From Lytechinus pictus (Eukaryota), in the NCBI RefSeq assembly GCF_037042905.1, contig NC_087249.1, positions 4,092,001 through 4,156,000 of the forward strand: 64,000 nt of DNA, read 5' to 3'. How positions within the stretch are numbered: the stretch's first letter is position 1; each line of letters starts with the position of its first letter. The notes under the pieces were generated by a model. That model searched no databases. It was not told the origin of the DNA and was given only the letters and a program-made list of their open reading frames with translations. A program made the position numbers and the translations under genes. Of the stretch, positions 3,313 to 49,974 are shown in pieces.

Positions 3313-6188
3313 TTATGGCCAAACAATAACGGGAAGGCTGTGTCTGTATTTCCTGAGTGTAATCGCAGCGGCAGCCACTGCGACAGTGAGTAGACCTAGA
3401 ACAGCGAAAGCTACGCCAACACTACGCCTGGATGAGCCCGTTGTCCTCTTCAACAACCGATCCGTATTCCTTGCCTCAAAAGTCAAACCCTTACCACTAC
3501 CTCTGAGAATCGGTAGAACGTTACCACTTATCTGATGGCGGTCACCTCCCACCATTATTGCTTGTCTGTTATCAGCATCGACATCGTTGACGAGGGCCGT
3601 GTCCATACCAGCGTACATATAGACGTCTTCTTCGGAAGACTCAGAATCACCCCCATCGTCTCCAGCGAAGACACCAACATCAAATCCACCACCACCGCCT
3701 CCACCACCACCACCACCACCACCTGCTGAACCGCCTATGCTCGAATATGCTGGTGCTGACATCCCAGCGTACGTTTCAGTCATGTCAGTCTGATCGAAAG
3801 GAATATCAAACAGCGTTTGCCGGGCTTCTCTTGTCTTCCCAAGCCCCCGCGCGTCAGACAGCACAAAGCACACTGTATAAAAGAACAATCACATGGAAAC
3901 AGGTTGCATAATTGTATGATAATATCAATGGAAAGGTTATACATGCACATGATTTTATGCAGATATCGCCATTTTTCAACTTTAACAAATCTGTTCGGGA
4001 ATCTCACCAAGAAGGCTGCAGAAGAAGGGTGACCAACTGGGAGGACGGTTGCTCCCCTCACTCTCCCTATTTCCAGGGCTAAAGGATCCCTTTAGCACCT
4101 CTGCCTCTGCCTCTTCCCGACATTGGCTCACACAGCTCTTGGTCATTCTCTTCTCTGCGGACCTCGAAGTTGATTATCATATCACCAAGAAAAAAAAACC
4201 ACCCATAACATATCACTATCTTTATTTCATAATGTTCCCTTTTGCCTATTCTTCATGTTCTTGAATTTAAGTGCCCATCTGCGCCCGTCGGAAAAACCTA
4301 TGGTATAAACCAAGAGTAACCTCAGCGGACTTAATTAACACAGATTGAATGTATAAAATTTTAGATGTACAGCTGCTATATCAAATAATAATTTAAAAGA
4401 AAATGATGAGATAAACCTGCTAACATTGCTTCATTTCTTTCCCAACTTCCTCAATTGCCCGAACCATACGTCCTTCTCGTGCCAAATGTCTTGCTTCTTT
4501 ATTTTACACCTATGCACACACACTCAGCATTATCTCCACCATTGATAGCTGACGATATAACTTTTTAGTTGCAACAATTATAAAATTTTAACTATGTAAA
4601 TTTATTCAATAAAACATAACTGAAACTAGGACCCCGTTCTCATTACAATTCTCAAGAAACTAGTTTAGTGGAAACCGGTCCAGGAAGCCAGTTTTGAAGA
4701 TCGCTTTGATAGCCATGATAGCGTACCCATCTGATCTGACCCGAGAGTCAAGCGGCCTTGCTGCTACGGAAACACTCTCAGTGGGGTGATATGTTTCTGC
4801 GCCCCAAATGACGAAAACAATCGCAATTTGAACATATGAGGAGGGAGCATGTGCATCCCTGCCCCCTTGATTGCCTAGACAGGTAGAATTTAAAAGCCTT
4901 TGCCAAGTTCATCTTTGAAAAGGCGTCCTGTTCTCGATGATTGAGATATACCTTTGTGGTTTATGACTCACCACATTGATTTGGGAATGCCGAGCTAGAT
5001 GAAACGATCGAACTACTAGTACTCTAGAACCAATGATCTACCGTTTGAAGTTCCCAATAAGAGCCAATAACCCCCATAACCTGAATATTGTTGTCTTGTG
5101 TGCCCCATATTATGTACGGTGCAGGGACAGATCTGAATGGAAGGGGGAGAACACAGACATTTCCCGACATTTTTTTGAGAAGAAAAAAAAAATTATCATA
5201 TCCATATCTGGAGCAGAACCTTTCCAGCACACACACAAAAATGACAAGCAAAAAAGGTGTTCACTCTCGGGATCCATTTTCATCGCTTCAAATGACTGGG
5301 GAGGGGGAAGAAGAAATTTAGGGACCACTTTATATATATCTGTGTACAACTTTCGCCAAAGTGGGGTGGGGGAACGTGTCACCTGTGCCCCTCGCAATGC
5401 TCACCTAACATGATGGCTCGTTAATTACTAATAAGGACAACCTCCTCTTAAGTATAGGAGATCATCAATCTCATGAGGCCCAGTCAACAAAGATTTTTTT
5501 CATGGAACGTTCTGCATTTTTTTGCACCACGTACAGTTCAATCGCTGCTTGATCTACACCCTCTTTGTCGAATTAACGTTTGGTCTCATCCCACAAGGTA
5601 GAATTCTATTCCGTCAACAACTTCTGCTACTTACGATTTGATCGAATGCAACGGACACGGAAGCCGAGCTGACCCTGGCTTTCAGGAACCGGATAACAAT
5701 TTCGGGATTATATTCAAAAGCTGATCATTCAGCTTTTGGAACAAAAGATGCGGGAAGCTGATGCCTTTTGAATGGAGAAGACGCCTTACAATTTAGCCCA
5801 TTTGCAATTTTGTCTTATTTACTGTGGCCTTTGAGCTGTTATGAATCAAAATTTCATTTGACAAAGTGCAAAATTGTAAGTAGACAAACTACAAATCAGA
5901 CCATGCGAGCATTAGAATAACAGTTATTTCTAGTGAGACCAAATGATAATTAGATTTTTTAAAAATAGTAGACCTTTTACGAATTAGACCATCTGCAAAA
6001 AGGTGGATACAAATCCACAACAGATGAGACTGAAGAAAGGTAATAGCAGTTCATGTAAAAAAAAAAAAAACAGTACCCATGATGACAAAACAAAAATATG
6101 GAATATTAATTTAAAAAACATTCATATCTTAACTCAACATACCAGACACAATCGCAGCGAGGCAGATGACATTGAAGGAAAAAGCCAT
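3313..6188 (-). CDS. P16-related acidic Gly-rich type-I membrane protein (gene 1); complement(join(3313..3872,6143..6188)), 201 aa
   Basis: Exon 1 ATG at 6188 encodes MAFSFNVICLAAIVS+G then GTATGT. Acceptor ttcttttatacAG precedes 3872. The phase-1 join gives signal peptide MAFSFNVICLAAIVSVCFVLSDA, then RQTLFDIPFDQTD, G13, DDGGDSESSEED, TM SVGVAFAVLGLLTVAVAAAAITL and tail RKYRHSLPVIVWP. Confidence 0.88.
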
Positions 6189-6350
6189 TGCTAATTAAGC
6201 TTTAAATACCACAAAAGTGAAACAATGATGCGTGCAGCCAAGAAGCACACCATAGGCATACAAAGGTAAAATGGTGTCCTCACTAGTGATGCCCTCCTCT
6301 CTACAAGCGATTGCAGATTCCGAACTGAGGTCTTAGTTGAAAGAATTATC

Positions 6351-6392
6351 TTTTAAATATCACTTCACTTTCTTGTATTGGGGTACTTCCTG
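6351..6392 (-). promoter_or_regulatory. Candidate gene 1 promoter: TATA-like TATTTAAAA plus Ets site CAGGAAGT
   Basis: On the minus strand, ATATTTAAAA at 6351-6360 lies ~165 nt upstream of the ATG; ACTTCCTG at 6385-6392. Confidence 0.45.
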
Positions 6393-6439
6393 CATCCAAG
6401 GGGGCAATTACATCACTTTCAATCTTTCAGATTCGAGAT

Positions 6440-6622
6440 GAAAAGAGAGAAAGGAGGGAAAGAGAGCCAGAGAGGGGAAGGAGATATTGAAAGAGAGAAG
6501 TTGATGAAGAGAAATGCAGAAAACGTGAGAGGCAGATGGAGAGAAAGAGAGAGGAGAAATTAAGAGAGATAGGAGAGAGATGGGGAGAGACAGAGAGAGA
6601 GGGAAAGAGGTAGGAGAGGACA
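6440..6622. repeat. GA-rich polypurine tract upstream of gene 1
   Basis: Direct inspection. Confidence 0.75.
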
Positions 6623-13900: not shown

Positions 13901-14036
13901 AGAAGTGATTCATCTCCCCAATCGGTCTACATGGTCTACGGGATTCTCAGGGTTGTGCCATTTAAACAGGAAACGTTCTAGTTGTGACATTAATTAGTCG
14001 AAGTTATACATGGAGAAAGTAAAAATGGCGGCGTCG

Positions 14037-16360
14037 ATGAAGTTTTGCACCCATCTTTCCATCACGATTACTTTGTTTTATGGTGAGTACGCCATTCATG
14101 AGCTCAGTCTGGCATGCGATGTATAAATTATCTTCAGACCGATTTCCAAATGTTTCCCTATTTCGTTGTTAATGTTACTATTTTTAATTGTCTTACCATG
14201 TCATACATGTCATATCCAATACTAATTTTTGCGGCCCAGGACATGGATCTGAATAGTCTTTCATGTATTGCGATGCCTCCATTTACACATTTTACACAAA
14301 GTATTTGCAAACTTATTTTATCAATCCATTATAGTGAAAGAAAGCCAATGTTTATGGGTGATGTGATATCTCACGTCATTATTATGAAAATTGATTTAAA
14401 GTGAGTTTATATATTTTGATAGTTGATGATGAATTGAGAATAGGCACCTCGTATGGTATATCGTGAAAGATCAGAGACACGAACGGTTATCCTTGGAATA
14501 ATGGGTTTTTAACATTAATTTGAGGTTGTATATCGTTGATTGCCTGTACCAGAATAGTTTATATTGATAGCAAACTTACTATGAGGATGATCCTCAGCAA
14601 CGGGTTCTTGTCATTTTAGGGAGGATCTATCAATCTTGAAAGGAAATTGGTTCATCGCCGTGCTTCATCAAAGGCTTTCCGCTATCGAGAGATCGCTAGG
14701 GTCATTTTCACCCCAGATTTTCTCATTTAAACGATTTTTACTTCACTGCAGTCATTATTGTTTCTAAACAATTTATCATTATATTTTTCATTTTTTTTAT
14801 ATTAATGGATATAGGGGAAATGCGAAATTTATTTTATTGAATATCAATTTGCAGATGAATTGCCGTTATATATTTGGCGACGATGAGTAGAATTAGTTTT
14901 ATATTTTATCAGTGGGCTAAGGGATGACAAATACCATGAATACCCTACCGACTTAAGCTGCTGCTCGCCACACTAAATCCCGTAATATCGAATATCATGT
15001 GCTATGATTATGAAAAACGTATGTTTTGCTTCTCTTTGATGTACGCTACAATTTTGGTTGGTGTTAATGAAATGCGCAATTGTACTATTTTTTATTGTCA
15101 AATGAATGAATATAGCAACTTGTTTTTTCAACTATATTTCAAAAGAAACACGAAAATGCATAAATCAAAGAACAAATTAACTTGGCAATTAGACAATGAA
15201 TACATGTAATTAATGAAACTTTATGATATAAAAAAGTCGTATTTAAAAAAAAACGGGTAAATGATTCCTTAAAATATATGTTAATCCCTTAACTGACGTC
15301 CAATAATTGACACAGTTCCCTTATGTTAGATCTTTTGAACGATCAATGAATGACAAAACACATATATAAAAAAAAATATTTGCTTGAATTTACATTATCA
15401 TTGTTTTCCAGAAAAAAAACATATATGTAAATATAACCAGTAAAATTGCCTTTTGGTCTACACCCACTTTGTTTAGTTTCCGTTTGGTTTAATTCCACAT
15501 GGTATAATCCTACTTCGTCTATCATCAGTTCATCTACTACCCATTTGGTCTTACGGCTATTTAGCGCTCCTATAATTTTGTTTAATTTGCAGTTTGGTTA
15601 TAAGCATTTTATTCAATATCTTCTTGGTCTAGCACTTAAATAGTTGAACTGTTCATGGATTAAAATGTCTGTAAATTGACAAGTCAAAGTAATCAAAAGA
15701 CGAAGTGGAAATCAAATTCGACTTGATGAAACAAAGTAAGTGTAGTGTAGACCAAAAGGATGAAGCCCATGTGGTTGTAGACTATGACAGAAGTGGACCA
15801 ACTGTTTGAATAATTGAGTAACAATAGTAAATACTTTTAATATATACTGATTATTTTTGTTCTTATTTCAATACCTGACAGCTTTATGTTTGAGGATAGA
15901 GGCGAAGCCAGCCCAAGCCCTCTCGAGGCAAACCGCTGTCAACAATATTCCCCTCGCTCAGACACAGATGGAAATGGAAGCAGATAACGATGTCTATGAA
16001 AGCGACATAGAAGAACCCTCCAACAACGACCCCGAAGAAGCGGACAATGAAAACGAAAACGACATTGAAGTCGAATCCGTTGTCGCTGGCGATGCTGATG
16101 CCGATTTAGATGTGATTGAAGTTGATGCCGGACCTCCAAACCCCATTGGTCGTAACGGATGGACAGGATCTGGATTGTGGAAATCAAAAAAGCGAAACGA
16201 ACACAGCTCCTTGGCCACAGAGAGTAAAGTATCCCACATCGGAATTGGTTTTGGGGTCGTCATCCTCGTGATCGCAGTGGTGGTCGTCTCTGGATTAGCT
16301 ATTAAGAGGCCAGGTTCAAGTAATACCAGTAATATACCTCCCGAACTGAATATAGACTAA
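14037..16360 (+). CDS. P16-related Asp/Glu/Asn-rich type-I membrane protein (gene 2); join(14037..14082,15882..16360), 174 aa (in-frame upstream ATGs at 14010 and 14025)
   Basis: Exon 1 MKFCTHLSITITLFY+G then GTGAGT. Acceptor tttcaatacctgacAG ends at 15881. The phase-1 join gives signal peptide ...ALCLRIEA, then RQTAVNNIPLAQTQ, acidic EADNDVYESDIEEPSNNDPEEADNENENDIE, TM IGIGFGVVILVIAVVVVSGLAI, KR and a short tail. AATAAA at 16383. Confidence 0.87.
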
Positions 16361-18748
16361 GGCTCATATTTGTCTTAAATTGAATAAACAGGTATATAAA
16401 ATCGGAAGATATCAATATATCCCATGTCCTCCTTTCCCCTTCTTAAACCAGCCCTTCCCTCTCTCTCTCTCTCTCTAGATTCCACTCTTTATCTCCTCCC
16501 TCAAATCTCCCTTTCTTTCATGGGATTGCCCGATTATATTTTTATTTGATTACGAACTTGTTTATGAACATTTTGATAAAGATAAATGTATATTATGATT
16601 GAAAGTTTATATCAAATGGATTTAAATCATTATAATTGCTGATATGAGGTGTTTTTATTTGCAGTGGGGAAAATGATCAAGAGATGGAAGCAAGGGAGAG
16701 TAAAAAGAACGCTGTTGATGTTAATGATGATCATAAATGGATGAAGGGAATGATCTTGATGAAAATAGATCTTCTCATAGTGTTAATGCTGTTGAAGATA
16801 AAATTGATAATGATGATAATGAAAAATTATGTTTGTGATTATGAAAATGTTAATGGTGGTGGTGATGATGATGACATTAATGCTTATGATTATACTGATG
16901 ATTTCAATCGCATATATTATGTGTGATTGAAATCATCAGTAGAATCATAAGCATGATGCACATTTCCCATAACGTTAATATGATGATGATTTATTTTCAG
17001 ATATTTTATAAACATCTGATAAGAATTTAAAAAATCGTAACACTTTGATTTCAAAAGTTAAAAATGTCCTTTGAAAGATCTGTTGAAATACCTCATACTG
17101 AAAACAATTAGGTTTTCGGCAACTAGTATATATTTTTTATAAAGAGAGCAAATATGAACCATATAGCAAATAACTCATCAAAAATTATTATGTCTGTATA
17201 TGAGCATTCTCACACGCGGAGAGGTCAAATGGGTTAGAATTGTCAGAATCATAGCAACATAAGTGTTAACAAGCAACTATCATAACTGTGAGACCAATAT
17301 CATTGTTATCCTGGTTGTTATCATCCTTACTTGTCCCAAAGAATTCCTGAGAAAGAGAGAGAAAGAGAGAGAGAGAGAAAGAGGGAAGAAGGGGAGAGGG
17401 GGAAGGGGAGAAGGAGAGGGACAACATATATAGTGCTGATCAATATCGATGAGAAATTGGAAGTCTCTCAAGGAAATCCCTAAATGGCTCTGAATAACTG
17501 GCGTGACCCAGGGCTGTGTCCTTGCCCTTGCCTTATTTAAGCCACGATTTCATTGATATTATCTGTAAATGGCTAAATGCAGAAAACCACTCAAGGAATA
17601 TTTACTTATTAAAGTAAAGTGATTAGCTCGATTACTTTCACTGGACGTTATATAACGACATGACTATTGTCTACGATATTCGTCACTTTTTTACAAAAGA
17701 AAAGTGATAGTATCCCTTAACTATAAGGAACCGTTGACAAACATTGCTCTTGAATATACAGGGATCTTATCATAAGAAAAAAAAAAAGGAAATACTCAGT
17801 TAGTAATTTATAATTTCAGTTAAAAAATTATTAGGTAGTTATACATTTAAGAACTGTAATTATAATTGGTCCTTTTTATATCAACTGAATGGAATGGAAA
17901 TACACACATTTCTTAATGGTTATAATGTGAACAGTGCTCTTCAGTCTACAACGAAATTTTTCATGCACAATTGGTTCCCAGTTGACAAAAATATTGTCTC
18001 AAAGTTAAATCAATTCAAGCTTTGTATTTTCATGGCTAACGTGAATAGTAAGCCTTTAACCCCTTCCCTAACATCGACATAGGACAAAAGATTATTCAAT
18101 TTCTAATAAATTTTGCAATACGATGAGGAAAAGTTATAAAGTGATGGGTAATTTTACAGCCACACCAGAATAACAAACTTCGAACCGACCTAGTTTGTCA
18201 GTCGACGTATATCATTGATCAGTCTGGAATAATTTTTCAGTGATGACTACAACGTCCATCGATGACAGTATTTACATCATTTTAAGATTATTGAATAAAT
18301 TAATCAAACTCCACATAACAAGTCTTTACTTTGATATGCTACGAGATGTGCAATGAAAATATAGCTTCTGGTAATGACTAAACACCGCAGTAAAATTAAT
18401 TGACGGAAGGACATGGAATTCGGCTGTTTTATAAAGTAGCTCATTATAAATGCAGATATAGAAATGACTAATAAGTTTTCTTCTGCAGTCGGCAAATCCT
18501 CATGAAAGTAACGAATCAACATTGCAATATGAATGCAAAGACACGTGGATTAAGATGGAGGATTTAGGGGGATTCGTGCATGTGTCAGGGTGGGAAGACG
18601 TGCCCCCTGAACGCCGGGGCTGACGTGGGAGATAGATGCGACTGTATGAAACAAGGTCAAGGTATAGGATTTGGGTATAATTCTTAGTTGCGAGTTTCTC
18701 TCTTGGATAACAGCTGGATGGTTTGCTTTGATGGAGAATATAATTGCT

Positions 18749-18755
18749 TATAAAG
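18749..18755 (+). promoter_or_regulatory. TATA box, gene 3
   Basis: TATAAAG ~190 nt upstream of ATG 18938. Confidence 0.45.
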
Positions 18756-18937
18756 CAGTGTAAAATTTAGCGGAATCATTAAAGTTTGTTTTAACAACGT
18801 GAGTTATTGGTGTATCTGTGTTGATTCGCTAAGTATAATTCAGTCGTTGCTCCTGATCACAGGGATGAGATTTTTAACCATTCAAGCTTTGAAGAAAAAC
18901 ATTTTGAAGTCAAGTTTGGGGAGTTTTATCAAGCATA

Positions 18938-20213
18938 ATGCCTACGTCTTCAACCTTTCTTTGTCTATCGATAATAGTTCTTGGTGAGTAAATTTCGCTA
19001 GCATTTCTGTTTACTGCTGGATTATTCTGAGAAATAATAATATTTCATCTTCATATGTTTTAATTTCTTCTACCTCTTTTGTTAATAGTTTTCTTCTTTA
19101 AAAAAAAACCGAAAGGCATGCTCAATTGTGAAATAAATGCAAATACCGGAAATTTATATGGCATAAATACAATGTACATAGTCATGATATTCGGCAATCT
19201 CCAAAATAACCAAGAGAGTTAAGAAAATGAAATTTATACCGCTTTTGTAATTTTTGTAGACTTGTCCTCCTGGAAAATTTTCCTGTATGTAATTTGTGTT
19301 TACCTCATGAGACGCCACAAACAAAGAAAACATGATATCTGCCAAGTGAATAAATCAAACTTAATACTTATATATTTCAATTAGGTAAATGATAAATGGT
19401 GGTGATTTTTTTACCTGAAAGCATGAGGATTAATTCCTTGCCAAACGGCACTAGCGCACCAAGTGGGTATCGAATCCGGTCACCGGAATCCGAAACCCCC
19501 GCTCTACCGAATGAGCTATTGCGCCTCCAAGAAGATGGATTAATACATGAATAACGAAAATTGTTAGGTGAGTATTAACTGGATAATGTTTTTTCTTCTT
19601 CCTGTTGTTATCAGTCTTGTGCGCCATTGCTGACGCAAGACCATACGGGAAATATCCAACACCAGATAAACCTGAAAAGCCACATGGACCAGAAGGACCC
19701 GTACAGCCATTTGCCTTCTTGAAGACGTTTGGAGCTGGCTTCGTTAATCCTGCACAACCCAAATCTCCCGCAGCCCTCAACCGTCAAACAATCTTTGACG
19801 GTCCATTCAACCAAGTTGACTACCCTGATCAACCAGACATCCCAGATGCTCCTGATATCCCTGACGCACCTGACGCACCCGATGCACCCGACGCTCCTGA
19901 CGCACCGGACTATGAAGAATACGAGCCTCCTGATACACCAGACGTTGGGGCACATGAAAATCCAGGAGTCTTCTCCGATGGTGGATTCGGTTTTCTCGGA
20001 GGAGCTGCCCAAGCACCTTTCATGATGACTGGTGGTAAATCCCCGAGCTCGATGGGTCAGGGGATGATGACCAAATACAGGAAGGGTTCGAGTTCGGGAT
20101 CTAGTGTCGGCATCGCTTTCGCCGTGCTCGCCATCATTGGTTGCACAATTGCACTGGGGGTTTTCTTTTTCAAAAAGTACAGACACCATATTCCGGTTAT
20201 CGTCCTTAAGTAA
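18938..20213 (+). CDS. P16-related Pro/Asp-repeat type-I membrane protein (gene 3); join(18938..18983,19615..20213), 214 aa
   Basis: Exon 1 MPTSSTFLCLSIIVL+G then GTGAGT. Acceptor ttttcttcttcctgttgttatcAG ends at 19614. The phase-1 join gives signal ...VLCAIADA, then RQTIFDGPFNQVD, (PDx)n, TM SVGIAFAVLAIIGCTIALGVFFF and tail KKYRHHIPVIVLK. AATAAA at 20585. Confidence 0.9.
19415..19528 (-). mobile_element. tRNA-derived SINE fragment in the gene 3 intron
   Basis: GGAGGCGCAATAGCTCATTCGGTAGAGC...GGATTCGATACCC followed by SINE body TTTGGCAAGGAATTAATCCTCA. Confidence 0.6.
19818..19943 (+). repeat. 9-bp coding repeat encoding (Pro-Asp-x)n in gene 3
   Basis: CCT/CCA/CCC/CCG-GAT/GAC-NNN units reading DYPDQPDIPDAPDIPDAPDAPDAPDAPDAPDYEEYEPPDTPD. 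Confidence 0.9.
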
Positions 20214-24374: not shown

Positions 24375-25102
24375 CTAACAGTTGGTCATCTTGATGAAAG
24401 GAATACGGAGCTTATTTCTTTTGATGACATACACAGACACTCCGACAGCGGCACCGATCAGAGCGAGCACGGCGAAGGCGATGCCGACACTTGAACTGGA
24501 CGTCGATGCCTTCTTAAGTGGTTCCATTCCAGGGTTCTCACCATTGGGACTGCCAAAGATTGGAAGCTTTCCTCCATGGGCACGGTCGTTGTGACGGTTA
24601 CCCATTGGCTCTACGCCATCACCGTAGTCGCCGACATCAGCTCCCTCAGCACTGACATCGCCTTCCGCTGATGACTCACCAGAGGAACTGCTGTCACCTG
24701 CGCTGCCGCCGGCGTCCATCTGGTTCAAGGGAGCGTCAAACATGTTCTGTTCAGCCGGTGGAGGAATCGCATGTTGGGCCTTGGCGTGTCTTGGGTGGCG
24801 GCCTGAGAGCTTGACGGGATTTGCGTCGACAACCATGCAGTAAGCTGTATAGAATGTATTGAAGTGTAATGCAAAGATAATTAGCAGTATGACATCGGCA
24901 ATTCATTTTTTAAAAATAATTTTCTCTTCATTCATCAGTACAAATAATGATGTGCCCTTTCCGAGACGTATATGTTGTATGCGAGTCACGACAAAGTCTA
25001 CCCTATATTGTAATTAATGACAATTCTTCAAAATCATTTCAAGCGAAATTCTATCGATATTAACCAAATATCAACAAAACAATCATTATGTGGAGGAACT
25101 GA

Positions 25103-25175: not shown

Positions 25176-25593
25176 GAGGTGCACTAGATAACGGAGGCCT
25201 GCTCCCCGCCCCTGAAGTGTAAGGATTCGCTAATAGTATCTGTCATCAATAGGTACTATTATATGACTATGTATGTCAAATATTTATAAGAACCCCCAAC
25301 ATGGATTTCATAAAGTTTAACATCACCGCAAATATTGGAATTCATAGTAGAATTGATCCATGTATATGATTATTTTGGCCAAAGACGTGAATTATGTGAG
25401 CTTTTAAAATTGTCATCTTAACATGATTGTAGAGTTATGATTGTTGATTACTTATTTTAGATGATGAATATATATTTTTAGATGATTTCTGGATGGGACA
25501 CCGTCTTATGTCAAGACATAGGAGCATGCAGGTGTATGAATACTTACCGATGAGTGTTGCGAGGATGCAGAACAGCTTTCCTTTGGAGCACAT
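24375..25593 (-). CDS. P16-related Ser/Gly/Asp-rich type-I membrane protein (gene 4); complement(join(24375..24844,25548..25593)), 171 aa
   Basis: Exon 1 accatcATG encodes MCSKGKLFCILATLI+G then GTAAGT. Acceptor attctatacAG precedes 24844. Signal ...AYCMVVDA, then EQNMFDAPLNQMD, DSSSSGESSAEGDVSAEG, TM SVGIAFAVLALIGAAVGVSVYVI and tail KRNKLRIPFIKMTNC. Confidence 0.9.
25108..25178. repeat. (GA)n microsatellite in the gene 4 intron
   Basis: Direct inspection. Confidence 0.9.
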
Positions 25594-35583: not shown

Positions 35584-36506
35584 AAAACCATAGAATATAA
35601 TGCAGCTCTATAAAACGATTTTGTTTTAAACGCATTTCAGCGCACGAAGACAAAATCTTTTAATGAGGAATATAATGAAGTATGTATATAATAATTTATG
35701 TGAGTAATTATTTTTACTAAAAAAAGACAAATACTCAGCATGATAAATATCTTAATTGAATCTTCACAACTTAGAAGGTGGAAGGCAAACAAAACCATAA
35801 AGCTGTTTAAAAATGTTGAACAACGAATAAAGGTGAAATTTTTTTTTTATCAAACAGAAACAAAACGTACCAAATCAAACTAATCAAATAAACTGTAAGT
35901 CATTCTTATTGTTTTAGTGCAAACTTAGTTCTGAAGGCAAAAACCGAAGTTAAAAAAAGGGTTAGTAGAACAAAGAAAAAAATGTTTCTGCTTTCCACGA
36001 GAAGGTATTCAGTTATTTTAGATCATCATACAGGACCTTCTTCCGTTGGGGGGAGGGGAATTGGATGTCATGGAATTATAAGGCAAACAGGGCTTAGTTG
36101 AAAAACAGTTTCACAAGTAGCGTTTATCAAGTCCCTGAGCGATAGGTATCTTTAAGTTCATCAGAAAAGAGAAGGGATAAATACGACCATCCTGATAGAG
36201 GAATTTGTCATATCATGTCCCTTGTAATTTAGTTAATAACTGTCTATCGCTAAATCGACCCAATGTACCGTGATGTTGGTGGCATAGTAAGATTCATGTT
36301 GATGATGTCAGGTCATAGATCCTAGCTAGACACCGTTGCCAAGCTAATACCAACTTTAACGAACATGGGTGTCTTTTAATATGGTGTTATGACTGTCGTC
36401 TTTGATCAGGCATTTAAGCTGTACTTACAGCTCAGGCTGGCAGTGGTTGTAAAAATGTAAAAAAGACGTCAAGAGTTTGTGATAAATCTATATAGCGAAT
36501 TAGTTC

Positions 36507-39095
36507 TTATGCGTTTGAAAGCATTTGGGCGCCATTTTGACGTTTCCTGTAGACAAAGTATCCGACACCTGCTGCTGCTACAACGGCTCCTACGGCAAAG
36601 ATGATGCCAAAGGCCATACCACTCTTCTGCTGTGCGGTCATAGAGCCGAGATTTGAGACTCCGTTGTTGCCGGCACCGCCGCTGTTGTCTTCTGACGAGT
36701 CATCGCTGCTGCCGTCATCGTCAATGCTGTCGTCATCACTGCCAGTGTCGCTGCTGGTGTCAGAACCACCGTAGCTGGTTCCTCCCATTGCATCTGCGCT
36801 GCCAGATGTTCCGTAGTCTGATGTACCCATGGCTCCTCCTCCATAAGCGTCGTTAGCTCCTATCTCACCACCACCACCATTACCTAAGTTGAATTGTGTT
36901 CCATCAGTACCTGGAATTCCTCCTGTACCTGTACCTGGTACGGCTGCTGCTACAGCTGCAAAAACAACATCAAATAACATGGTTAGAGATAGGCACAAAA
37001 CAATATTATGACCAAGGGTGAAACTCTGTCCCTAATACATTCTTACGGGGTGGTCATGAGGACTGACCTTTACTGGCACCATCCGAAAGACATTACCAAA
37101 TCTTGAACCTCGAACCTCTGAATTAGTATGTATAAATATTACAATCAGCCATTATCTATCAACCTATACGGTCTCAAAATAGTACAGTAAACATTGTACT
37201 TATACTATTAAATATTACCCTGATGATATTCTAGATCCTGTAGATATAATCTTTTTCATGATATTATTATGATATAAGACATGTTGATACGTTTTCAAAC
37301 CATACATGCTGACGCAATATCATGAAGGTTACGTGATATATGCGGGTAACCCCTTCAATGCCAACAACGCATGTGACGCTATAATGTTGGTCTTAATATG
37401 TACTGTCAGAACATGAGTCAGTTGATTCGCCTGCGTCATAAGTCGAGGTCAAGAGTGTTATATTTGAACCTTTCACAAGACCCCTCTTCCTGTTTTCAAA
37501 CCACTTACATCTTCAAGGGAGGTTCTCCGAAATTATGTCGTCACTTATTGAAAAGAAAAGAAGTTCCGCTCTTTTTACTCCATTGTACACATCAATCATA
37601 TAGGATAATAGTAATGACTGAATGATTACAAAGTTAAATTTCGGTGTTAGATATGAGGGCAAACCTTGCGAGATGATCAGTTTCAGGCACATAATGTAAG
37701 ATCGATGACATATCTCATTCATTCCACATAATTGTATATTGTAGATAGATTGATAATTACGCTGAATTACAATTGATTGTATCTTGGGCTTTGATAATAA
37801 AAAGGGTCATCAAAATAAATGATTGTAATTACAGTGCAACTAATGGAATAGAACTGCATAATCATTGAATTTTGATCTAATAATCACTAATGAACTTGTA
37901 GTTTTTTTTATTTACAGTATTTCATCGGAAGTCTGAAGTATGTTAAAAAATAAAACATTTTCTAACTCGTCAAGATGATGAAGGATTATTGGACAATGTT
38001 GTACCCATGTTTATTTTCTAAATAAATAAATCTTGGGGAGGAGAAACTAGTGGTTTCCCCAGCATCAAGTTGAACGCGTATGTATATATCCCTCATTCTT
38101 TTTATGCTATATATCTTTTAATGAGTGAAAAAAAAAATTGAAAAGTAAAAAAAAAATCCAACATCGAACTTATCAGGAAATTGCTCATAGAAGTCTGGTA
38201 AACATTGGATAAACAGAGGATCATCAAATGAGACGGAAACTATGTTTTACTGATTTAATGATTGCTGCCGTTTTGAGGAAATCTAAAAATGTCTCCTCCC
38301 CTTACACGACAAAAACAATTCCTATATAATGATAAGATTAGGATTATTAGGATCTGCCATTCAATATCATGTTTTCAGAAATTTTCATCTCTTAAATAAA
38401 GGATATACAGTTGTTATTTAAATCGCTATTCCATGAAGTAATTTAATATCTAATCTTGGATTTGGGTTAAACCATCAAATTAGTGATAAAATTTGCCACC
38501 TTGCCCCGTAATGTGTTTAAGGGAAGAACTATAGTTAATGCCCAGATACCATTAATAAAATGGTTCTCTTAAATCTCACCATGTAAAATGTGACGATTGT
38601 CAATGACACATCAACTAATGACTGAATTATTTTTAGATTTTCCTGGCTCAGACTCATATTCGGCAACCACGTGCTATGTCTTAGTCACATGTAGTTCTGT
38701 CAGCGCGGTTTAGCGGATTGTGAACAAGAACTTATTTTAAGATTTGTAAGACGCAGAAGCCCTGTACATTGAAATAAATTAGTGTTGAACTTTCTTTTGC
38801 TGTTATCAATAACATAATACAATACAACGAACAGATAAAAGAAACAATATCAAATATGGTAAACGTCTATGTCAAAGGTAAAGAAAATACGATTAGAAAT
38901 GTAAAAAAAATGTGCATTAGAAGTAACTTATTATTTTAAATAGACAAAAAAAAAACATCACAAAATGCATATGCAGATAACGATAACAAATGTCATCACA
39001 ATTAAATAAGGATGATTAACATATGCACAATCGATGAAGTCCGAAATTGCCAACCACTTACCAACAAAAGCAAATAAAGCGATGATGGTCTTCAT
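36507..39095 (-). CDS. P16: P16 skeletogenic biomineralization transmembrane protein (gene 5); complement(join(36507..36955,39062..39095)), 160 aa
   Basis: Exon 1 ttaccATG encodes MKTIIALFAFV+G then GTAAGT. Acceptor gttgtttttgcAG precedes 36955. Product MKTIIALFAFVAVAAAVPGTGTGG... has a Gly-rich then Ser/Asp-rich region (DTSSDTGSDDDSIDDDGSSDDSSED), TM SGMAFGIIFAVGAVVAAAGVGYFVY and tail RKRQNGAQMLSNA. Recognised from memory as the sea urchin P16/UTMP16 type; no search was run. Confidence 0.92.
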
Positions 39096-39701: not shown

Positions 39702-39705
<4 letters not shown>

Positions 39706-39746: not shown

Positions 39747-39751
<5 letters not shown>

Positions 39752-43900: not shown

Positions 43901-45262
43901 CTTATATCATAAACATTGTCACCTGCTTTTTACCGATTCTCTGTGCTGAACATGTTTATTATGTACACGAGGTATGACGCTGTAGAAATGCATTAACTGA
44001 TCGAACTTTGTTCTCAGAAAAAAAGCTTCTTGTTTTGGTTCGAAATGATATCTTACACCACGATTACTGTCTTTGATGCACGAATGTGAGCTTCTTGGTT
44101 GACCAAAAGATATAATTTGCTCAGTTGAGTACGATGCTAGAATAAATCTTGTAGAAAACATTAATGTACTGTATACTTTGAAACTATCAGATAACAGTTT
44201 ACATTTCTCTAAAGATCGTGTAAAGGCGGGAATCAATCAATTATCTTTGTTAATTGGAAGTAGAACTTGGCCAGTGTTCAGTAATCACTGTCATATATGA
44301 GGACTGGTGACTTCATAACTGTACATGCATATAGACCCAATAAATCAAACATTATACGTGTTATACTTATGAGAAGCATATTACATAATGCTTGTTTGCT
44401 ATATGCATTGTTGCAATTTCTTTTAAAAGCGTCAGGATATTTGTCATAAATTACGAGTGCTGCAAGAGCTTACATAATTATGATACACGGTTCATCAAGA
44501 ATGTATAGAATAAAGTAGTACTTAACCATTGTAATTAACATGATAAGATTTACAAGAAAACAAGAAACGTATTTATTCATAAACATGAATTCATTCATTC
44601 ATGCTGTCACCGTTCGTTTCTTCTAGATTATGATCCAACTCTTAGTTTCCTTATGATTGAAAAGGGGGTTAGTTCAATGCTAAACCCTTAGAAATCCATC
44701 AAACATTTATGTAGTGCATGGGGGAGGGGAACAAAATAGTAAATCACGAGACATAATCCACAGACCACGCCCATAGCAGCCGCCATGCCAACATACAGTT
44801 GAATGAAAATAACACATCTAATTCACAAGCTTGTATTATACATTAACAACAACAACATCAACAAGGCACCTAGACCATACTTTTTATGGATTTAAAGTAG
44901 TGTACATTTTTATTTTATAAATAAAAAATGCTAGACCCCTCCTGAACATGACCGAACAATCACCTTTATCATGTTTATCCAATATTTTAAATGTCAGATA
45001 CATTGTCAAATAGAATATTAATTATTTTATAGGCAAAGTGATGAGTGCTCGGAATTAATTATAACGCGTTCATACATACTTTGATAATCAATCAATTCAA
45101 TCAATCATTTATACAAATCACATCAATAAAAGTGACAAGACCAGGCTTTCATAGCCGCGGTGATGATTAAATTTGATGGTTGTGTAAAGTTAATTTTCTT
45201 GTGAACAACGTTGCTTGAGATGAAACGTGCTAAAAGAATATTTTCATCTCGGCAACACTAGT

Positions 45263-48200
45263 TCATGGAGCATAAATTAAACAGGTGACTATAAATGTTC
45301 CAGGTAGAATTCCCCAATTTGCCCTCCAAAAAGTCCCAATGCTCTTAAATCTCGAATTTGCTGAGCTCGTCAGGTTGCTAGCCAGCAGGGCAAACTCCGA
45401 TTGCATTTCGGATTCTACTTCGGATTCGGATACAGATGTGGATGATTCGGATTCAGATTCAGATTCCACCTCCGATTCAGCATCCGACTCTTCGCTACTA
45501 TCTCGCCTTCGTCTGCTCAATGATAAAGCTTTGATAATGTGATTCAAATACTCATCATCTCCTTCGGTTTGTGTAAGATCCGTTAACCGTAATCTGGTTT
45601 TCGAGTTAGACCATAATGACACATTTGAGCCCCTATAGTACTTGGTTGACGCAATATTCTTTTCAAAATGGCGGGTTCCTCCTTCAGAGATGGATGCACT
45701 GCCTGAAAACATAAATGATCAAACGATAAAAAAAAATATTTTGATATATACTGTAATGATTTTGATGAATAATATCTGTAATACATTATTAGCTATATTA
45801 ACTTGGTAGTCATTTTAATCATATTCAATATATTGAGTATATGGCACAGCGACTCTTCCTCGCCGTTTATTTATCGTCTCAGAATTTTTGTGACGTAATT
45901 ATCGGTAATGACTTGTCGTCGCTTTGTTGTACAGTCTACGGAAATTCAATAATAAAAATAATATAGCTTTTACGAGGCGCCAGCTGCCTAAAGGGACTTT
46001 CACAATAGCTCTTGCGATCGTTTGTGATAATTTGGTCACAATTATGTTGAACAGAATGGCAACGGTTGTAAGCAGTTGCACCACCAATTGTGAAAGGTGC
46101 ATTTACGTGCTAGGTGCATTGGTACACTGCATCAGTTAAAATAGTCACTTTCAACAGATATGTATCACTCAGTAATACTTCATGTTCGATAGACTTAAAC
46201 TTTCAAGTCTTCGGTAATGTACATCAGCTGTTTTTTATTTCAACAACAAATTTTAATCTAATGATTTTTTTCATTTAGATTTGAATTTCTGTTGAAATAA
46301 ATGAACATAAATTTGTCAATTTGTGTTGAATAAATTTGGTATTGTTTCGTTAAACATCATGAAAAAAATGAAGATTGAATGGCCAATACAGCGAATCTGT
46401 AATTACTGTCAAACCTGATTTAATATGGAAACCAAGGGTACCGACAAGTGAAATATCGCATTTTAACACGAGCTATAAGAATAGGTTTTAAAAATAATAA
46501 TATATAGCGTTTATGAGGCGCCAATTTATCTAGTTGCCTGTTCAATGGCGCACTATAAATTACCCTGGCTGAAGCTCCAGCTGCTAAAGGCGCTTGGTGC
46601 ATTCAAGGAATTAATCCTGCCGGGTACCCATTCACCTCACCTGGGTCGAGTGCAGCACAGTGTGGTTAAAATTCTTGCTGAAGGAAAACACGCCATGGGT
46701 AGCATTCGAACCCACGACCCTCTGTTTGAAAGGCGAGAGTCAGAACCACTAGACCACGACGCGCCCACATAACATTTATATAATGTACATACATTCAACC
46801 GTATGGTAATAAGAAATTGTACCAATTCACAATACAACGTTCAAGAACTGACAGAACCAGGTGCCGCAGAAAACAAGCAACAAAAATACAAACCGAGGGC
46901 GTATCAAAGTTTAAATAGCAATTGAATTAGGTGTATGCTATTTCTGTAAGAACGCAATCATGACTAACTATACTGTGATATATTCAGATAGAGGGGTAAG
47001 CTAAGAGATGGCAAGAACCCCTTACGAGGATGGATGACGTGAAGTTGATAATACATCTCTAAATTTCCAAACTTCGACAATAATCGACAAAAATATTGTC
47101 AAAAAACCGTTAAGAAGATATGCACTGCTCCCAACTTCGACCTATGCCACTCTCAGATAGTTTTGACCGACCTATGTGTGAGTAAGCATTACGGACCTTA
47201 ATTGTGTTCATTGAGATATAACCTTTATTAACTGAACTTAAAATTTTGTTCCACCAAAATAACTGTTTATCCAACCGAACTTATATGTTTTTCTAACTGA
47301 GACTGTATGAAATAGCATTTTTTTTTCTTCAAAATTCTATAACATTGGTTTCTAGCTGTCATTTGCTCCAAAAATGGTAGGTCGCCAATCATGCCGATTA
47401 AAGAAACAATTTTAAACAACTCATTTAAGGCTGAATTACAGAAGGGACAATTGCAATATTCCTTGATGAATGCTATAAGCATAGAAATACAAAGTGCATT
47501 GTTTCATCATAATATCATCTACCTGTTCTCTTTATACAGTACATGTCATGAAATTAAAAGCAGGGGAGAGAGAAGGGAAGATGAAAAAGTCAGGGACAAT
47601 TTGAAAGTTTAACGGTTACACAAAACATAAGAAATTAGTAACATTATTATGAACCTTCATCGCTTGATGAGTAATAGATATTCGTTATGAACATGTCAGA
47701 ACGTTAACGTAACGAGACAGTCAAGAGTTAGTGAAAAATCGTCATTCATATCTTCATCAACGTTAAATTCATCTCGGCATTACTTTTTAAAATTTATTTA
47801 CTATCATTCTGTCAATCTTTCTTTCTCATTTCGATTGGAAACAAAAGAAAGTTACCAAAAATGATGTGTTTATATGAAGTGCTTACCGTTATTTAATACG
47901 ATCACGTTACACACGTGACACTATATCGAATACACATGATTTACACATATAGATTGAAGCAGTGTGATCTTCATTTGTCATTAATGGCTTGAACTCATTC
48001 AGCACGTGTTATTTCGTTGTGATCGGAAAAAGTGGACTTCTAACTCCTAAAGCAAAAGCAGGCAAACAATTTAAAGTAATTATCAGATGTTTACTGTGAC
48101 GTCATTTTGTTTGACCCATTTCAGAAAGACATATTATGATAAAGATTTAAAAAGGGTGAAGCAATTCTGTAATCGTTTTTATATTTCTTTTTAAACCTAT

Positions 48201-49974
48201 GTCAAAAATCTTTATGACGCAGGAATAATGTACTGTACCCGTTTCCCAGGTATATTGAACACGTTCTGTAGCAATAGGGAACAGAACGTAAGAGGCTACT
48301 ATCAGGAGTACCGTGTCCACTTACGTCATCGTTCCGACTAGTGCAAGTCAGATTTGATTTATGTTCTACAGAGTTATTTAAAGGAAATCATAAAGCAATT
48401 CCTAAATACTTTGTATCTAAATTAACAGCCCAACTAATTGTCCACGCCACCATCTTTCATCAATGAGCTATGACGTAATTCAGTTAGTTCTATCATGATA
48501 TGATCCTACGTCTGTTCTATTATCTCATGTCACAAAGGTAGCAACGGTATCAACAGGTTATTCAAATAATCCTGGCTGGACCCCCAAACTTTACACAAAG
48601 GTGAACATGATTGGGGTCCCGTGTTCTTTGATATATTACTTTGTAATATCGTCATGTAATTTATACGAACAACACATATGAGGAAGGTATCAATCTACGT
48701 TGTGTAGTTCAGGAGCGGTAACCGATTATTTAAACAAAATATAAGGAAAAGTTTGGAAAAGAAATTATTGGAAAAACATGACGTCTCAAAATGGACTTTG
48801 TTTTCAATAAAACAGTGGATGGATCACTAAATTAATAAGGTGAATTGGGGTAATGGCTTTATATTTATGATTTTTACAAACGAAAAGCGAAGACTGAGGC
48901 ATATATTTGAATGACGATCTGGTATGTGGAAATTCATTCGAAATTCGTTACCAGACTTCCATTAAAGAGGTCGATCCAGGGCGGGGTTGGGGGGGGGGGG
49001 TTGGGGTGGGGTGAATGGGCCTTTCCCCCTACCCCGACTTTTTTTTTTACTTGACAGAACCCCCTAGTCTGTCTCGGATCTGCCCCTGAGCCCTCATAGT
49101 CATTTGCAACCAAAATAATAATATTAGATAATATACCTCATACGGCTCACTCTTAAAATGTTGGGCAAAGTACTGTTCACACAACAATTGGTTAAAAAAA
49201 TTATTCAACTCTGGGTAGTTTTCAACCAAAGCACACATTATTGGTTTTAAAATACTCAGAAATTGATAAAGTTTTAACAAATTTTTGTGTAGACATTATG
49301 TTGCCCAACATTTTTAAGAGTGCACTAGATGGATGTTATTAACATATTTATCACAAGCTTTGATTTTTACTTGAAGACGTGAACATGCAGAGAAACTACG
49401 TACATGAATTTGTGTGTAAGATTCACTTCACAGAGAACTTAAGTATCCATGTTAAGAACTCATTCTTTTCTCCCACTTATCCAAAAGAACAACAATTTAG
49501 TAAACACTTACATGACATGTGAACCTATAAAGCTCTAACTTCTTTCTTTCTTTTACCTATATTCCATTTACATTTTCTTACTTTCAGCTTACAGAGACTA
49601 TGCTATGATACGCGCTTGACATATAGTGCATGATATGCTTTAAATGAATGACGGCCATGTCACGGTAGGTCATGTGATATTATGAGCATATAGCCCTGAA
49701 GTTAATCATTGAGACAGATAAGTCAATTTAAACAAAATTAATAAGTAAATATAAAGTATGAAAGTGACACTCCTCACTCAGTACTATCATTGATTGTTAA
49801 CGAACACTCCTTGAATTCTCAATACATCAGAGTACAACAATTTACATTAAGAAGCCTTGTGAAATATTCGCAAAAAGAGATGCCTTAACACGTACAGGTC
49901 AGATACTTACTGCAGACAGAGTATGTGAAGAAGACAAACGTAAAAATGACGCACGCCAAAACATGACATCTCAT
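45263..49974 (-). CDS. Secreted or GPI-anchored Ser/Glu-rich acidic protein with tetrabasic convertase site (gene 6); complement(join(45263..45702,49911..49974)), 167 aa
   Basis: Exon 1 acaataATG encodes MRCHVLACVIFTFVFFTYSVC+A then GTAAGT. Acceptor atttatgttttcAG precedes 45702. The phase-1 join is in frame with the 149-aa ORF: RRRR-DSSEESDAESEVESESESESSTSVSESEVESEMQSE, then a hydrophobic C-terminus WGILPGTFIVTCLIYAP with no cytoplasmic tail. Confidence 0.75.
46490..46766 (-). mobile_element. Near-complete tRNA-derived SINE in the gene 6 intron
   Basis: GGGCGCGTCGTGGTCTAGTGG (A-box), GGTTCGAATGC (B-box), body GACCCAGGTGAGGTGAATGGGTACC, tail ATAAACGCTATATATTATTATT. Confidence 0.85.
49148..49322. 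mobile_element. 175-bp MITE with CACTCTTAAAA termini
   Basis: CACTCTTAAAATGTTGGGCAA ... TTGCCCAACATTTTTAAGAGTG. Confidence 0.7.

What the first reader, a model, noticed from the sequence alone, without database searches (positions are those of the whole stretch)
3313..49974. Six-gene P16-centred cluster of acidic membrane-tethered proteins: a candidate echinoderm biomineralization locus analogous to the vertebrate SCPP cluster
Seen: six consecutive genes, with no other convincing gene between them, share one design of signal-peptide exon, phase-1 intron, acidic disordered ectodomain and C-terminal membrane anchor. Each has a different acidic chemistry: poly-Gly plus DSESSEED (g1), Asp/Glu/Asn (g2), (Pro-Asp-x)n (g3), Ser/Gly/Glu/Asp (g4), Ser/Asp (P16) and Ser/Glu (g6). 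Known: P16 is a primary-mesenchyme-cell membrane protein needed for larval spicule growth, and from memory a few P16-related neighbours have been noted in S. purpuratus. Inference: the locus is a tandem-duplicated toolkit of Ca2+/mineral-binding surface proteins, larger and more diverse than P16 plus one or two relatives. It parallels SCPP genes convergently, since SCPP introns are phase 0 and these are phase 1.
Basis: partly seen in the sequence, partly recalled or inferred. Interest (0 to 1): 0.9.

Follow-up and report, generated by a model that had tools for sequence, protein, structure and literature searches.

The report
Sea urchin P16 gene neighbourhood
This stretch of the painted sea urchin genome holds the known skeleton-growth gene P16 and five small neighbouring genes of the same two-exon build; four belong to a larger, unnamed echinoderm family of membrane-anchored acidic proteins, so the find extends a known group rather than revealing a new kind of system.

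Summary
All six genes are real, and all have a short signal-peptide exon followed by a phase-1 intron. The genome is Lytechinus pictus, and P16 is confirmed by published L. variegatus primers and peptides. RNA contigs confirm the g6 splice junction exactly. My g4 model equals a RefSeq protein. S. purpuratus orthologues support g1 and g2.

The six are not one demonstrable family. g1-g4 match a common profile. P16 shares only the gene build and a membrane-entry motif, G-[IVM]-[AG]-F-[GA]. g6 shows no significant similarity and has no typical transmembrane helix.

- L. pictus has at least 16 members: g1-g4, one gene 28 kb left of the window, and 11 in a second cluster 6.8 Mb away.
- The two-cluster layout and the g1-g2 pairing are conserved in S. 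purpuratus.
- Relatives with the same intron exist in Diadema and in the brittle star Amphiura.
- A Gly/Pro-rich basic anchored protein 18 kb right of the window matches the abundant matrix protein Sp-Hypp_2998/2999.

P16, p16rel1/2 and that neighbour are already published; the rest are annotated only as "uncharacterized". Skeletogenic expression and mineral binding of g1-g4 and g6 were not tested here. The SCPP parallel is an analogy, not membership.

The parts
3313..3872 (-). g1 exon 2 (with stop codon). Encodes the ectodomain with RQTLFDIPFDQ, a 13-Gly run and DSESSEED, then the TM segment and the KYRHSLPVIVWP tail. Product 201 aa.
   Evidence: ORF; acceptor in phase 1; family profile hit E 2e-50; S. 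purpuratus orthologue LOC100891699.
6143..6188 (-). g1 exon 1, coding part of 46 nt (MAFSFNVICLAAIVS), phase-1 donor.
   Evidence: the S. purpuratus orthologue has the same 46 nt and phase 1.
14010..14082 (+). g2 exon 1, coding part. The ATG at 14010 gives 73 nt (MEKVKMAASMKFC...); an in-frame ATG at 14037 would give 46 nt. Donor ATG|GTGAGT, phase 1.
   Evidence: the S. purpuratus RefSeq model begins MEKVKMASTMKFC with 73 nt and phase 1.
15882..16360 (+). g2 exon 2. Encodes an Asp/Glu/Asn-rich ectodomain, a TM segment starting IGIGFGVV, and the tail KRPGSS...
   Evidence: ORF; matches the profile built without it at 30.6 bits, E 2.6e-8; S. purpuratus orthologue lies divergent to the g1 orthologue.
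18938..18983 (+). g3 exon 1, coding part of 46 nt (MPTSSTFLCLSIIVL), phase-1 donor TTG|GTGAGT.
19615..20213 (+). g3 exon 2. Encodes RQTIFDGPFNQ, (Pro-Asp-Ala/Ile)n repeats, a TM segment and the KKYRHHIPVIVLK tail. Product 214 aa.
   Evidence: ORF; z 15-19 against g1 and g4; profile hit E 1.9e-48; RNA run X15 holds 0.78 of the words of 15882-20213. No orthologue or RefSeq protein was found for it.
24375..24844 (-). g4 exon 2. Encodes EQNMFDAPLNQ, a Ser/Gly/Glu/Asp region and a TM segment. Product 171 aa.
   Evidence: The spliced model is identical to L. pictus XP_063955434.1, LOC135154112; S. purpuratus orthologue LOC105443729 is 93% identical over the last 45 residues.
25548..25593 (-). g4 exon 1, coding part of 46 nt (MCSKGKLFCILATLI), phase-1 donor.
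36507..36955 (-). P16 exon 2. Encodes a Gly-rich then Ser/Asp-rich ectodomain, a TM segment starting SGMAFGIIFAV, and the tail YRKRQNGAQMLSNA. Product 160 aa.
   Evidence: The published L. variegatus P16 segment SDTSSDTGSDDDSIDDDGSSDDSSED is identical here; the reverse primer hits with 1 mismatch.
39062..39095 (-). P16 exon 1, coding part of 34 nt (MKTIIALFAFV), phase-1 donor TTG|GTAAGT.
   Evidence: The L. variegatus P16 forward primer matches 39070-39095 exactly; the model reproduces the T31 numbering.
45263..45702 (-). g6 exon 2, coding part. Encodes RRRR followed by a DSSEES...(SE)n acidic block and a hydrophobic C-terminus. Product 167 aa. The 3' UTR continues below 44501.
   Evidence: ORF; spliced RNA contigs in runs X1 and X15; single copy in the genome.
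49911..50182 (-). g6 exon 1. The coding part is 49974-49911, 64 nt, phase 1 (MRCHVLACVIFTFVFFTYSVC). The 5' UTR reaches at least 50182.
   Evidence: Predicted. The joint 45701/2 to 49910/1, with GT..AG on the minus strand, was seen in a 2121-nt contig (X1) and a 2438-nt contig (X15).

Best explanation
The window is the Lytechinus pictus P16 neighbourhood. It holds six real two-coding-exon genes. In each, a short first coding exon carries the start of a signal peptide and is followed by a phase-1 intron.

Four of them (g1-g4) belong to one echinoderm-restricted family of small type-I membrane proteins. Family members share these parts in order:
- a signal peptide;
- the motif [KR]-Q-T-x-F-D-x-P-x-x-Q;
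- a variable, mostly acidic, Ser-rich disordered ectodomain, often with an SSEE-type cluster;
- a membrane helix that opens with a small-xxx-small motif, G-[IVM]-[AG]-F-[GA];
- a short basic tail, often KYRHxIPVIV.

The family has at least 16 members in this genome, in two clusters on one chromosome. P16, and a Gly/Pro-rich basic protein just outside the window, share the gene build and the membrane-entry motif; they are probably very divergent relatives. g6 is an expressed neighbour encoding a secreted Ser/Glu-rich protein with a GPI-signal-like tail, and its kinship is not demonstrable.

Inferred mechanism, shown only for P16 and only in the literature: the proteins sit in the skeletogenic-cell membrane facing the mineral compartment. 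The conserved anchor and tail position or cluster them. The fast-evolving, probably phosphorylated, polyanionic ectodomains bind Ca2+ or amorphous and crystalline CaCO3 and tune skeletal growth.

The confidence of 0.6 blends about 0.9 for the gene models and family assignment with about 0.45 for the inferred function.
For: Gene models are supported as follows:
- P16 by published primers and peptides.
- g4 by identity to a RefSeq protein.
- g6 by spliced RNA contigs from two studies.
- g1 and g2 by S. purpuratus orthologues with the same exon-1 lengths and phase.

Homology:
- g1, g3 and g4 give z 15-19 against each other.
- g2 scores 30.6 bits, E 2.6e-8, against a profile that excluded it.
- The family profile finds 15 loci in the genome, and g2 adds a sixteenth.
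- Only 16 representatives match among 1.84 billion proteins. They come from L. pictus, L. variegatus, S. purpuratus, Diadema setosum, Amphiura filiformis and unnamed ENA assemblies.

Conservation:
- Orthologue pairs are 1:1 between L. pictus and S. purpuratus.
- The g1-g2 divergent pair and the two-cluster layout are conserved.
- The last 45 residues are 64-93% identical between the two species, against 43-76% for the rest.
- The phase-1 intron inside the signal peptide is present in Sp, Diadema and Amphiura.

Link of P16 and the Gly/Pro-rich gene to the family:
- With the C-terminal profile, P16 is the top non-family hit among 1565 ORFs (13.2 bits, E 0.0038; the next scores 5.1 bits).
- G[IVM][AG]F[GA] occurs 10 times in those ORFs. 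Eight are family members and the other two are P16 and the Gly/Pro-rich gene, each time at the start of the TM segment.

Function, from the literature:
- P16 is a PMC membrane protein required for spicule growth, and it sits at tooth syncytial membranes in contact with mineral (PMC2758014; bioRxiv 10.1101/2023.03.22.533866).
- The P16 TM segment alone restricts the protein's mobility in the syncytium.
- The Gly-rich P16 neighbour is among the most abundant spicule, test, spine and tooth matrix proteins (PMC2909932, PMC2527298, PMC2614417).
- p16rel1 and p16rel2 are listed as skeletogenic genes.
Against: - No expression data by tissue or cell type were available for g1-g4 or g6, so the skeletogenic role of these five is inferred from neighbourhood and resemblance only.
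- P16 fails the whole-length profile. Its match is confined to a membrane segment, where convergence is easy.
- g6 has no significant similarity to any of the others.
- Run X1, shown to be RNA, and X2 hold g6 but less than 5% of the g2-g3 stretch, so co-expression is not uniform.
- Palindromic Alx1-type sites are not enriched in the window: 4 found against 6.1 expected.
- Some relatives are basic, not acidic (c2_10 and the Gly/Pro-rich gene).
- I could not establish which of these genes are the published p16rel1 and p16rel2.
Confidence: 0.6

Rival explanations
1. One reading: all six genes, P16 and g6 included, descend from one ancestor by tandem duplication and together form a single SCPP-like mineral-binding toolkit.
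For: All six share the signal-peptide exon and phase-1 intron. P16 shares the membrane-entry motif. g6 aligns colinearly with the profile (signal peptide, then '..TDLTQTE..', then a DSSEES block), though at only 10 bits.
Against: g6 is not significant in any test and lacks the TM segment and tail. P16 lacks the N-terminal motif and fails the full-length profile. Phase-1 introns in signal peptides are common among secreted proteins, which is established knowledge, so shared phase is weak evidence. The family's centre of gravity is the other cluster.
Confidence: 0.25
2. The g1-g4 family encodes general small mucin-like or glycocalyx-type surface proteins that are used in many tissues and have no specific role in biomineralization. 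Their position next to P16 is a historical accident.
For: No cell-type expression data were obtained here. Alx1-type palindromes are not enriched. All members are annotated only as 'uncharacterized protein'. None except the Gly-rich neighbour was reported in the matrix proteomes.
Against: The family is restricted to echinoderms, the phylum with this calcite endoskeleton. It is physically linked to two proven skeletal genes in two species. p16rel genes are in the skeletogenic gene battery. Very acidic proteins poor in tryptic sites are easily missed by proteomics; Mann et al. say this of P16 itself.
Confidence: 0.15
3. g6 is an unrelated neighbour: a secreted, possibly GPI-anchored or proteolytically processed Ser/Glu-rich phosphoprotein with its own regulation.
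For: It has no homology to the others. An RRRR site lies directly before the acidic block, and the hydrophobic tail ends the protein. Run X1, shown to be RNA, and X2 hold it while lacking the g2-g3 stretch.
Against: It has the same two-exon, phase-1 build. It lies 6 kb from P16. Its DSSEES block resembles the family's SSEE cluster.
Confidence: 0.45

Closest known systems
P16 (Sp-P16, Lv-P16, UTMP16): primary-mesenchyme-cell membrane protein required for spicule growth
   Same: The gene at 36507-39095(-) is the L. pictus orthologue. It has the identical Ser/Asp block, matches the published primers, and has the same signal peptide, acidic domain and TM layout.
   Different: It differs from the published L. 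variegatus sequence at a few residues, for example IP for FQ in the N-terminal peptide. That fits a sister species.
p16rel1 / p16rel2 and Sp-Hypp_2998/2999 (Glean3:18406/18407), the P16-adjacent skeletogenic genes of S. purpuratus
   Same: They show the same idea of P16-linked genes expressed in skeletogenic cells. The gene 18 kb right of the window (30% Gly, 11% Pro, pI 11.3, C-terminal TM) fits the published description of Hypp_2998/2999.
   Different: That gene lies outside the window and is basic. I could not map g1-g4 or g6 onto the names p16rel1 and p16rel2.
Vertebrate SCPP gene cluster (caseins, enamel and SIBLING proteins)
   Same: Both are tandem clusters of fast-evolving, disordered, acidic, Ser-rich secretory-pathway proteins tied to a mineralised tissue, and both have SSEE-type clusters.
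   Different: SCPP proteins are soluble, their genes have many exons with phase-0 introns, and they are a vertebrate lineage derived from SPARCL1. The genes here have two coding exons and a phase-1 intron, and their products are membrane-anchored. The resemblance is convergent and does not indicate membership.
MSP130 family (GPI-anchored PMC surface glycoproteins)
   Same: Both are cell-surface, lineage-expanded, clustered biomineralization genes of skeletogenic cells. g6's tail looks like a GPI signal.
   Different: There is no sequence similarity. MSP130 proteins are large and folded, and were not compared further here.

Membership tests
P16 orthologue group | Sequence identity with the published Lv-P16 cDNA and peptides | tested here: met
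   Forward primer 0 mismatches, reverse primer 1 mismatch. The 26-residue Ser/Asp block is identical and the T31 numbering is kept.
P16 orthologue group | PMC-specific expression and requirement for spicule elongation | not testable with these tools
   Known for Sp and Lv P16 from the literature only.
Small acidic TM family (profile A1 / fam16; 'P16-related') | Significant match to a family profile built without the sequence | tested here: met
   Met for g1-g4: g1, g3 and g4 at E 1e-48 or better, g2 at E 2.6e-8. NOT met for P16 or g6, so those two are not filed as members.
Small acidic TM family | N-terminal motif [KRE]-Q-[TN]-x-x-[DN]-x-P-x-x-Q after the signal peptide | tested here: met
   Present in g1-g4. 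Absent in P16. g6 has only a loose look-alike.
Small acidic TM family | TM helix opening with G-[IVM]-[AG]-F-[GA], followed by a basic stop-transfer and a short tail | tested here: met
   Present in g1-g4, P16 and the Gly/Pro-rich neighbour. There are no occurrences in about 1550 background ORFs. Absent in g6.
Small acidic TM family | Two coding exons with a phase-1 intron inside the signal peptide | tested here: met
   Met by all six window genes and by the Sp, Diadema and Amphiura members.
SCPP family | Phase-0 introns throughout, signal peptide in exon 2, descent from SPARCL1, vertebrate distribution | tested here: not met
   The introns here are phase 1, the genes have two coding exons and the products are membrane-anchored. 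The SCPP features themselves are established knowledge. This is an analogy only.
Sp-Hypp_2998/2999 (Gly-rich matrix protein next to P16) | About 30% Gly, 10% Pro, pI about 11, signal peptide, C-terminal TM, linked to P16 | tested here: met
   Met by the ORF at C5:4173963-4174946(-), outside the window: 30% Gly, 11% Pro, pI 11.3, TM at the C-terminus, against the description in PMC2909932. No direct sequence comparison was possible.

The most novel reading that the evidence does not exclude
Echinoderms may possess an ancient modular family that predates the echinoid-ophiuroid split. It would have at least 16 genes in L. pictus, in two conserved clusters. In it, one conserved membrane module carries rapidly diversifying mineral-interacting ectodomains. 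That module consists of a signal peptide split by a phase-1 intron, a small-xxx-small TM helix and a KYRHxIPVIV-type tail. On this reading, P16 and the abundant Gly-rich matrix protein are divergent members of the family, and the conserved TM segments drive homo- or hetero-oligomerisation into a polyanionic layer at the cell-mineral interface.
Probability: 0.3. Interest if true: 0.6.

Novelty: new member of a known kind. Interest (0 to 1): 0.45.

Why it matters
P16 is one of the few sea urchin biomineralization effectors with a proven loss-of-function phenotype, yet how it works is unknown. Its neighbours may belong to a conserved family of at least 16 members that spans echinoderm classes and shares an anchor module with it. 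If so, there is a natural series of variants to study: the same anchor carrying Gly/SSEE, Asp/Glu/Asn, Pro-Asp, Ser/Asp or basic Gly/Pro heads. That series could be used to dissect which part of the protein controls mineral growth and which part controls membrane positioning. It also flags redundancy as a caveat for single-gene knock-downs. Finally, it points to very acidic proteins that matrix proteomics could easily miss, as Mann et al. suggest for P16 itself. The gain is incremental for the field: the core genes and the idea of P16-linked relatives are already published.

Tried and rejected
- A single-sequence protein search with g3 was swamped by low-complexity words and gave only spurious hits.
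- A protein search with the C-terminal 53 residues of P16 found nothing. I therefore could not fetch the S. purpuratus P16 locus and could not test P16-g4/g6 linkage there.
- Pfam gave no family for any of the six products or for ten other ORFs.
- Alx1-type palindromes (TAATNNNATTA) are not enriched: 4 found against 6.1 expected.
- Rfam and tRNA scans of the window were empty.
- Logan contigs carrying a g4-like protein (P0009) looked at first like transcripts. Their N-terminus is a read-through of the intron end, so they are not splice evidence and I dropped them.
- Raw RNA runs X19 and X20 had no reads on g6. Their tissue is unknown, so this says nothing.
- Literature searches for the LOC identifiers of the family and for SPU_018403-018408 found no paper beyond a table entry for Sp-P16. 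Livingston 2006 and Rafiq 2012/2014 are not held in the library.
- The spicule-matrix proteome supplements list no Glean3 neighbours other than 18406/18407.
- I did not run a structure or complex prediction. The proteins are predicted to be disordered apart from one helix.

Full report
**What is there.** The window has no assembly gaps. It is G000:C5:4092001-4156000 of an 812-Mb genome. A RefSeq protein of Lytechinus pictus (XP_063955434.1, LOC135154112) lies on a contig of exactly the length of C5 and equals my g4 model, so the genome is L. pictus. Each opens behind a pyrimidine tract and an AG acceptor in phase 1. Upstream of each is a short ATG exon encoding a hydrophobic leader that ends at a phase-1 GT donor.

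The gene models, in window coordinates, are:

| Gene | Strand | Exon 1 (coding) | Exon 2 | Product |
|---|---|---|---|---|
| g1 | - | 6188-6143 | 3872-3313 | 201 aa |
| g2 | + | 14010 (or 14037)-14082 | 15882-16360 | 183 (or 174) aa |
| g3 | + | 18938-18983 | 19615-20213 | 214 aa |
| g4 | - | 25593-25548 | 24844-24375 | 171 aa |
| P16 | - | 39095-39062 | 36955-36507 | 160 aa |
| g6 | - | 49974-49911 | 45702-45263 | 167 aa |

The coding part of exon 1 is 46 nt in g1, g3 and g4, and also in g2 if counted from its third in-frame ATG. It is 34 nt in P16 and 64 nt in g6.

**Independent support for the models.**
- P16: the L. variegatus P16 cDNA primers of Alvares et al. 2009 (PMC2758014) hit 39070-39095 with no mismatch and 36506-36532 with one. 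The published block SDTSSDTGSDDDSIDDDGSSDDSSED is identical. My spliced model puts Thr at residue 31 as in the cDNA.
- g4: the model equals the RefSeq protein.
- g6: one RNA contig in each of two runs from different studies (X1, 2121 nt; X15, 2438 nt) joins 45701/2 to 49910/1. It skips 4208 nt with GT..AG on the minus strand, exactly as predicted, and extends the 5' UTR to about 50182.
- g1 and g2: the S. purpuratus RefSeq orthologues have the same exon-1 coding length (46 nt and 73 nt) and phase 1. The Sp g2 leader MEKVKMASTMKFC matches the L. pictus reading from 14010.
- g3: it has no external model. It is supported by strong paralogy and by RNA run X15 holding 0.78 of the words of 15882-20213.

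**Are the six one family?** Only in part.
- g1, g3 and g4 are clearly homologous, with Smith-Waterman z of 15-19 against shuffles.
- A profile of g1, g3, g4 and five relatives (alignment A1) detects g2 at 30.6 bits, E 2.6e-8, among 1344 local ORFs.
- P16 and g6 are not detected by that profile, nor by a 16-member profile.
- A profile of the last 50 residues alone makes P16 the top non-family hit among 1565 ORFs. It scores 13.2 bits, E 0.0038, and the next hit scores 5.1 bits.
- The pentapeptide G-[IVM]-[AG]-F-[GA] occurs ten times in those ORFs. Eight are family members. The other two are P16 and a Gly/Pro-rich gene described below, each time at the entry of the C-terminal TM helix.

P16 is therefore plausibly a very divergent relative, but the evidence is confined to a membrane segment. 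g6 aligns colinearly at only 10 bits, has no paralogue in the genome, and has no typical TM helix. Its best 19-residue hydropathy is 1.22, and the hydrophobic run ends the protein, which looks like a GPI signal.

**The family is larger than the finding.** The profile finds 15 loci in the genome, all on C5:
- g1, g3 and g4;
- one gene 28 kb left of the window ('mL', C5:4063607-4064131, minus strand);
- eleven genes at C5:10893968-10956797, 6.8 Mb away.

g2 makes sixteen. The second cluster contains block duplications that are 87-98% identical at the DNA level. An earlier first-reader note of this scan (s1-329182) describes that place as an expanded P16-like locus. I reached it independently through the profile search.

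Eighteen kb right of the window, C5:4173963-4174946(-) encodes a 328-residue open frame. It has 30% Gly, 11% Pro, pI 11.3, a phase-1 acceptor and a C-terminal TM helix. This fits the published description of Sp-Hypp_2998/2999 (Glean3:18406/18407). That gene lies immediately next to Sp-P16, is PMC-specific, and encodes one of the most abundant proteins of spicule, test, spine and tooth matrices (PMC2909932, PMC2527298, PMC2614417).

**Conservation.** Among 1.84 billion representative proteins, only 16 match the profile. They come from L. pictus, L. variegatus, S. purpuratus, Diadema setosum, the brittle star Amphiura filiformis (a tandem pair) and unnamed ENA assemblies. All that carry a name are called 'uncharacterized protein'.
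- In S. purpuratus the g1 orthologue (LOC100891699) lies head-to-head with a g2 orthologue, as in L. pictus.
- The mL orthologue lies about 50 kb away.
- The cluster-2 orthologue lies 8.3 Mb away on the same chromosome.
- A tree gives 1:1 Lp-Sp orthologue pairs for g1, g2, g4, mL and two cluster-2 genes. It joins (g1 + c2_1/3) with (mL + c2_2/4) at 100/99 support. This indicates an old two-gene block duplication between the clusters.
- Between the two species the last 45 residues are 64-93% identical, against 43-76% for the rest. The anchor and tail are thus the constrained part and the ectodomain the fast-evolving part.
- The phase-1 intron inside the signal peptide is present in the Sp, Diadema and Amphiura genes.

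**How it probably works.** The literature shows the following.
- P16 is a PMC membrane protein needed for spicule growth.
- In teeth it concentrates at syncytial membranes that touch mineral, and it is phosphorylated.
- Its TM segment alone restricts its mobility in the syncytium.

I infer that the relatives are likewise anchored at the skeletogenic-cell surface. The conserved small-xxx-small TM helix and basic tail would position or cluster them. The acidic Ser-rich heads, many with SSEE-type clusters, would bind Ca2+ or CaCO3 phases. None of this was tested for g1-g4 or g6.

Weak counter-signals:
- Run X1, shown to be RNA, and X2 hold g6 but under 5% of the g2-g3 stretch.
- Alx1-type palindromes are not enriched.
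- Two relatives are basic.

**Comparison with the known.** P16, p16rel1 and p16rel2 and the Gly-rich neighbour are published. I could not map g1-g4 or g6 to the p16rel names. No searchable paper cites the LOC identifiers of the family.

The SCPP parallel holds as an analogy: clustered, disordered, acidic, Ser-rich proteins tied to mineral. It fails as membership, because the introns are phase 1, there are two coding exons, and the products are membrane-anchored. Phase-1 introns in signal peptides are also common in secreted proteins generally, which is established knowledge.

**Verdict.** There is a diversified P16-linked gene set, but it is a five-plus-one rather than a six-gene family. It is not centred on P16. 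It is the smaller part of a family of at least 16 members in two clusters that is conserved in euechinoids and reaches ophiuroids. This adds members to a known kind. Function remains inferred.

Noticed in passing
window 46441-46828 (intron of g6): A ~210-bp interspersed repeat with more than 2000 candidate copies in the genome, 89-96% identical among those scored. It has very high depth in RNA contigs and raw RNA reads and matches no Rfam family or tRNA. It is probably a SINE-like element.
   Followed up: partly
window 53201-56292: A 56-bp satellite of about 50 copies at 76% match. It produces the run of false ORFs at 53349-56449.
   Followed up: yes
G000:C5:4173963-4174946(-), about 18 kb right of the window end; candidate exon 1 at C5:4179213-4179165: Gene for a Gly/Pro-rich (30%/11%), basic (pI 11.3) protein with a phase-1 acceptor and a C-terminal TM helix starting IGMGFG. 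It fits the description of the abundant matrix protein Sp-Hypp_2998/2999 that lies next to P16 in S. purpuratus.
   Followed up: partly
G000:C5:10893968-10956797 (loci L005-L012): A second cluster of 11 family members. A two-gene block is duplicated at 87-93% DNA identity, and a one-gene unit of about 8.5 kb is triplicated at 89-98%. One member (c2_10) is Pro/Ala-rich and basic.
   Followed up: partly
G000:C5:4063607-4064131(-) (L002:1607-2134), 28 kb left of the window: A further family member ('mL') with a 37-nt first coding exon. Its S. purpuratus orthologue is LOC105443730. It extends the P16-side cluster beyond the window.
   Followed up: yes
window 3313-3872 (g1): The poly-Gly run is 13 residues in L. 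pictus and 4 in the S. purpuratus orthologue, so it is a lineage-specific repeat expansion inside a conserved gene.
   Followed up: no
L030 (Amphiura filiformis CM076859.1:28454416-28482372): The brittle star has a tandem pair of family members (194 and 195 aa). In the 194-aa gene mapped here, a 43-nt first coding exon is followed by a phase-1 intron of 7.4 kb. The ectodomain is rich in SEVE/SEVD repeats.
   Followed up: partly
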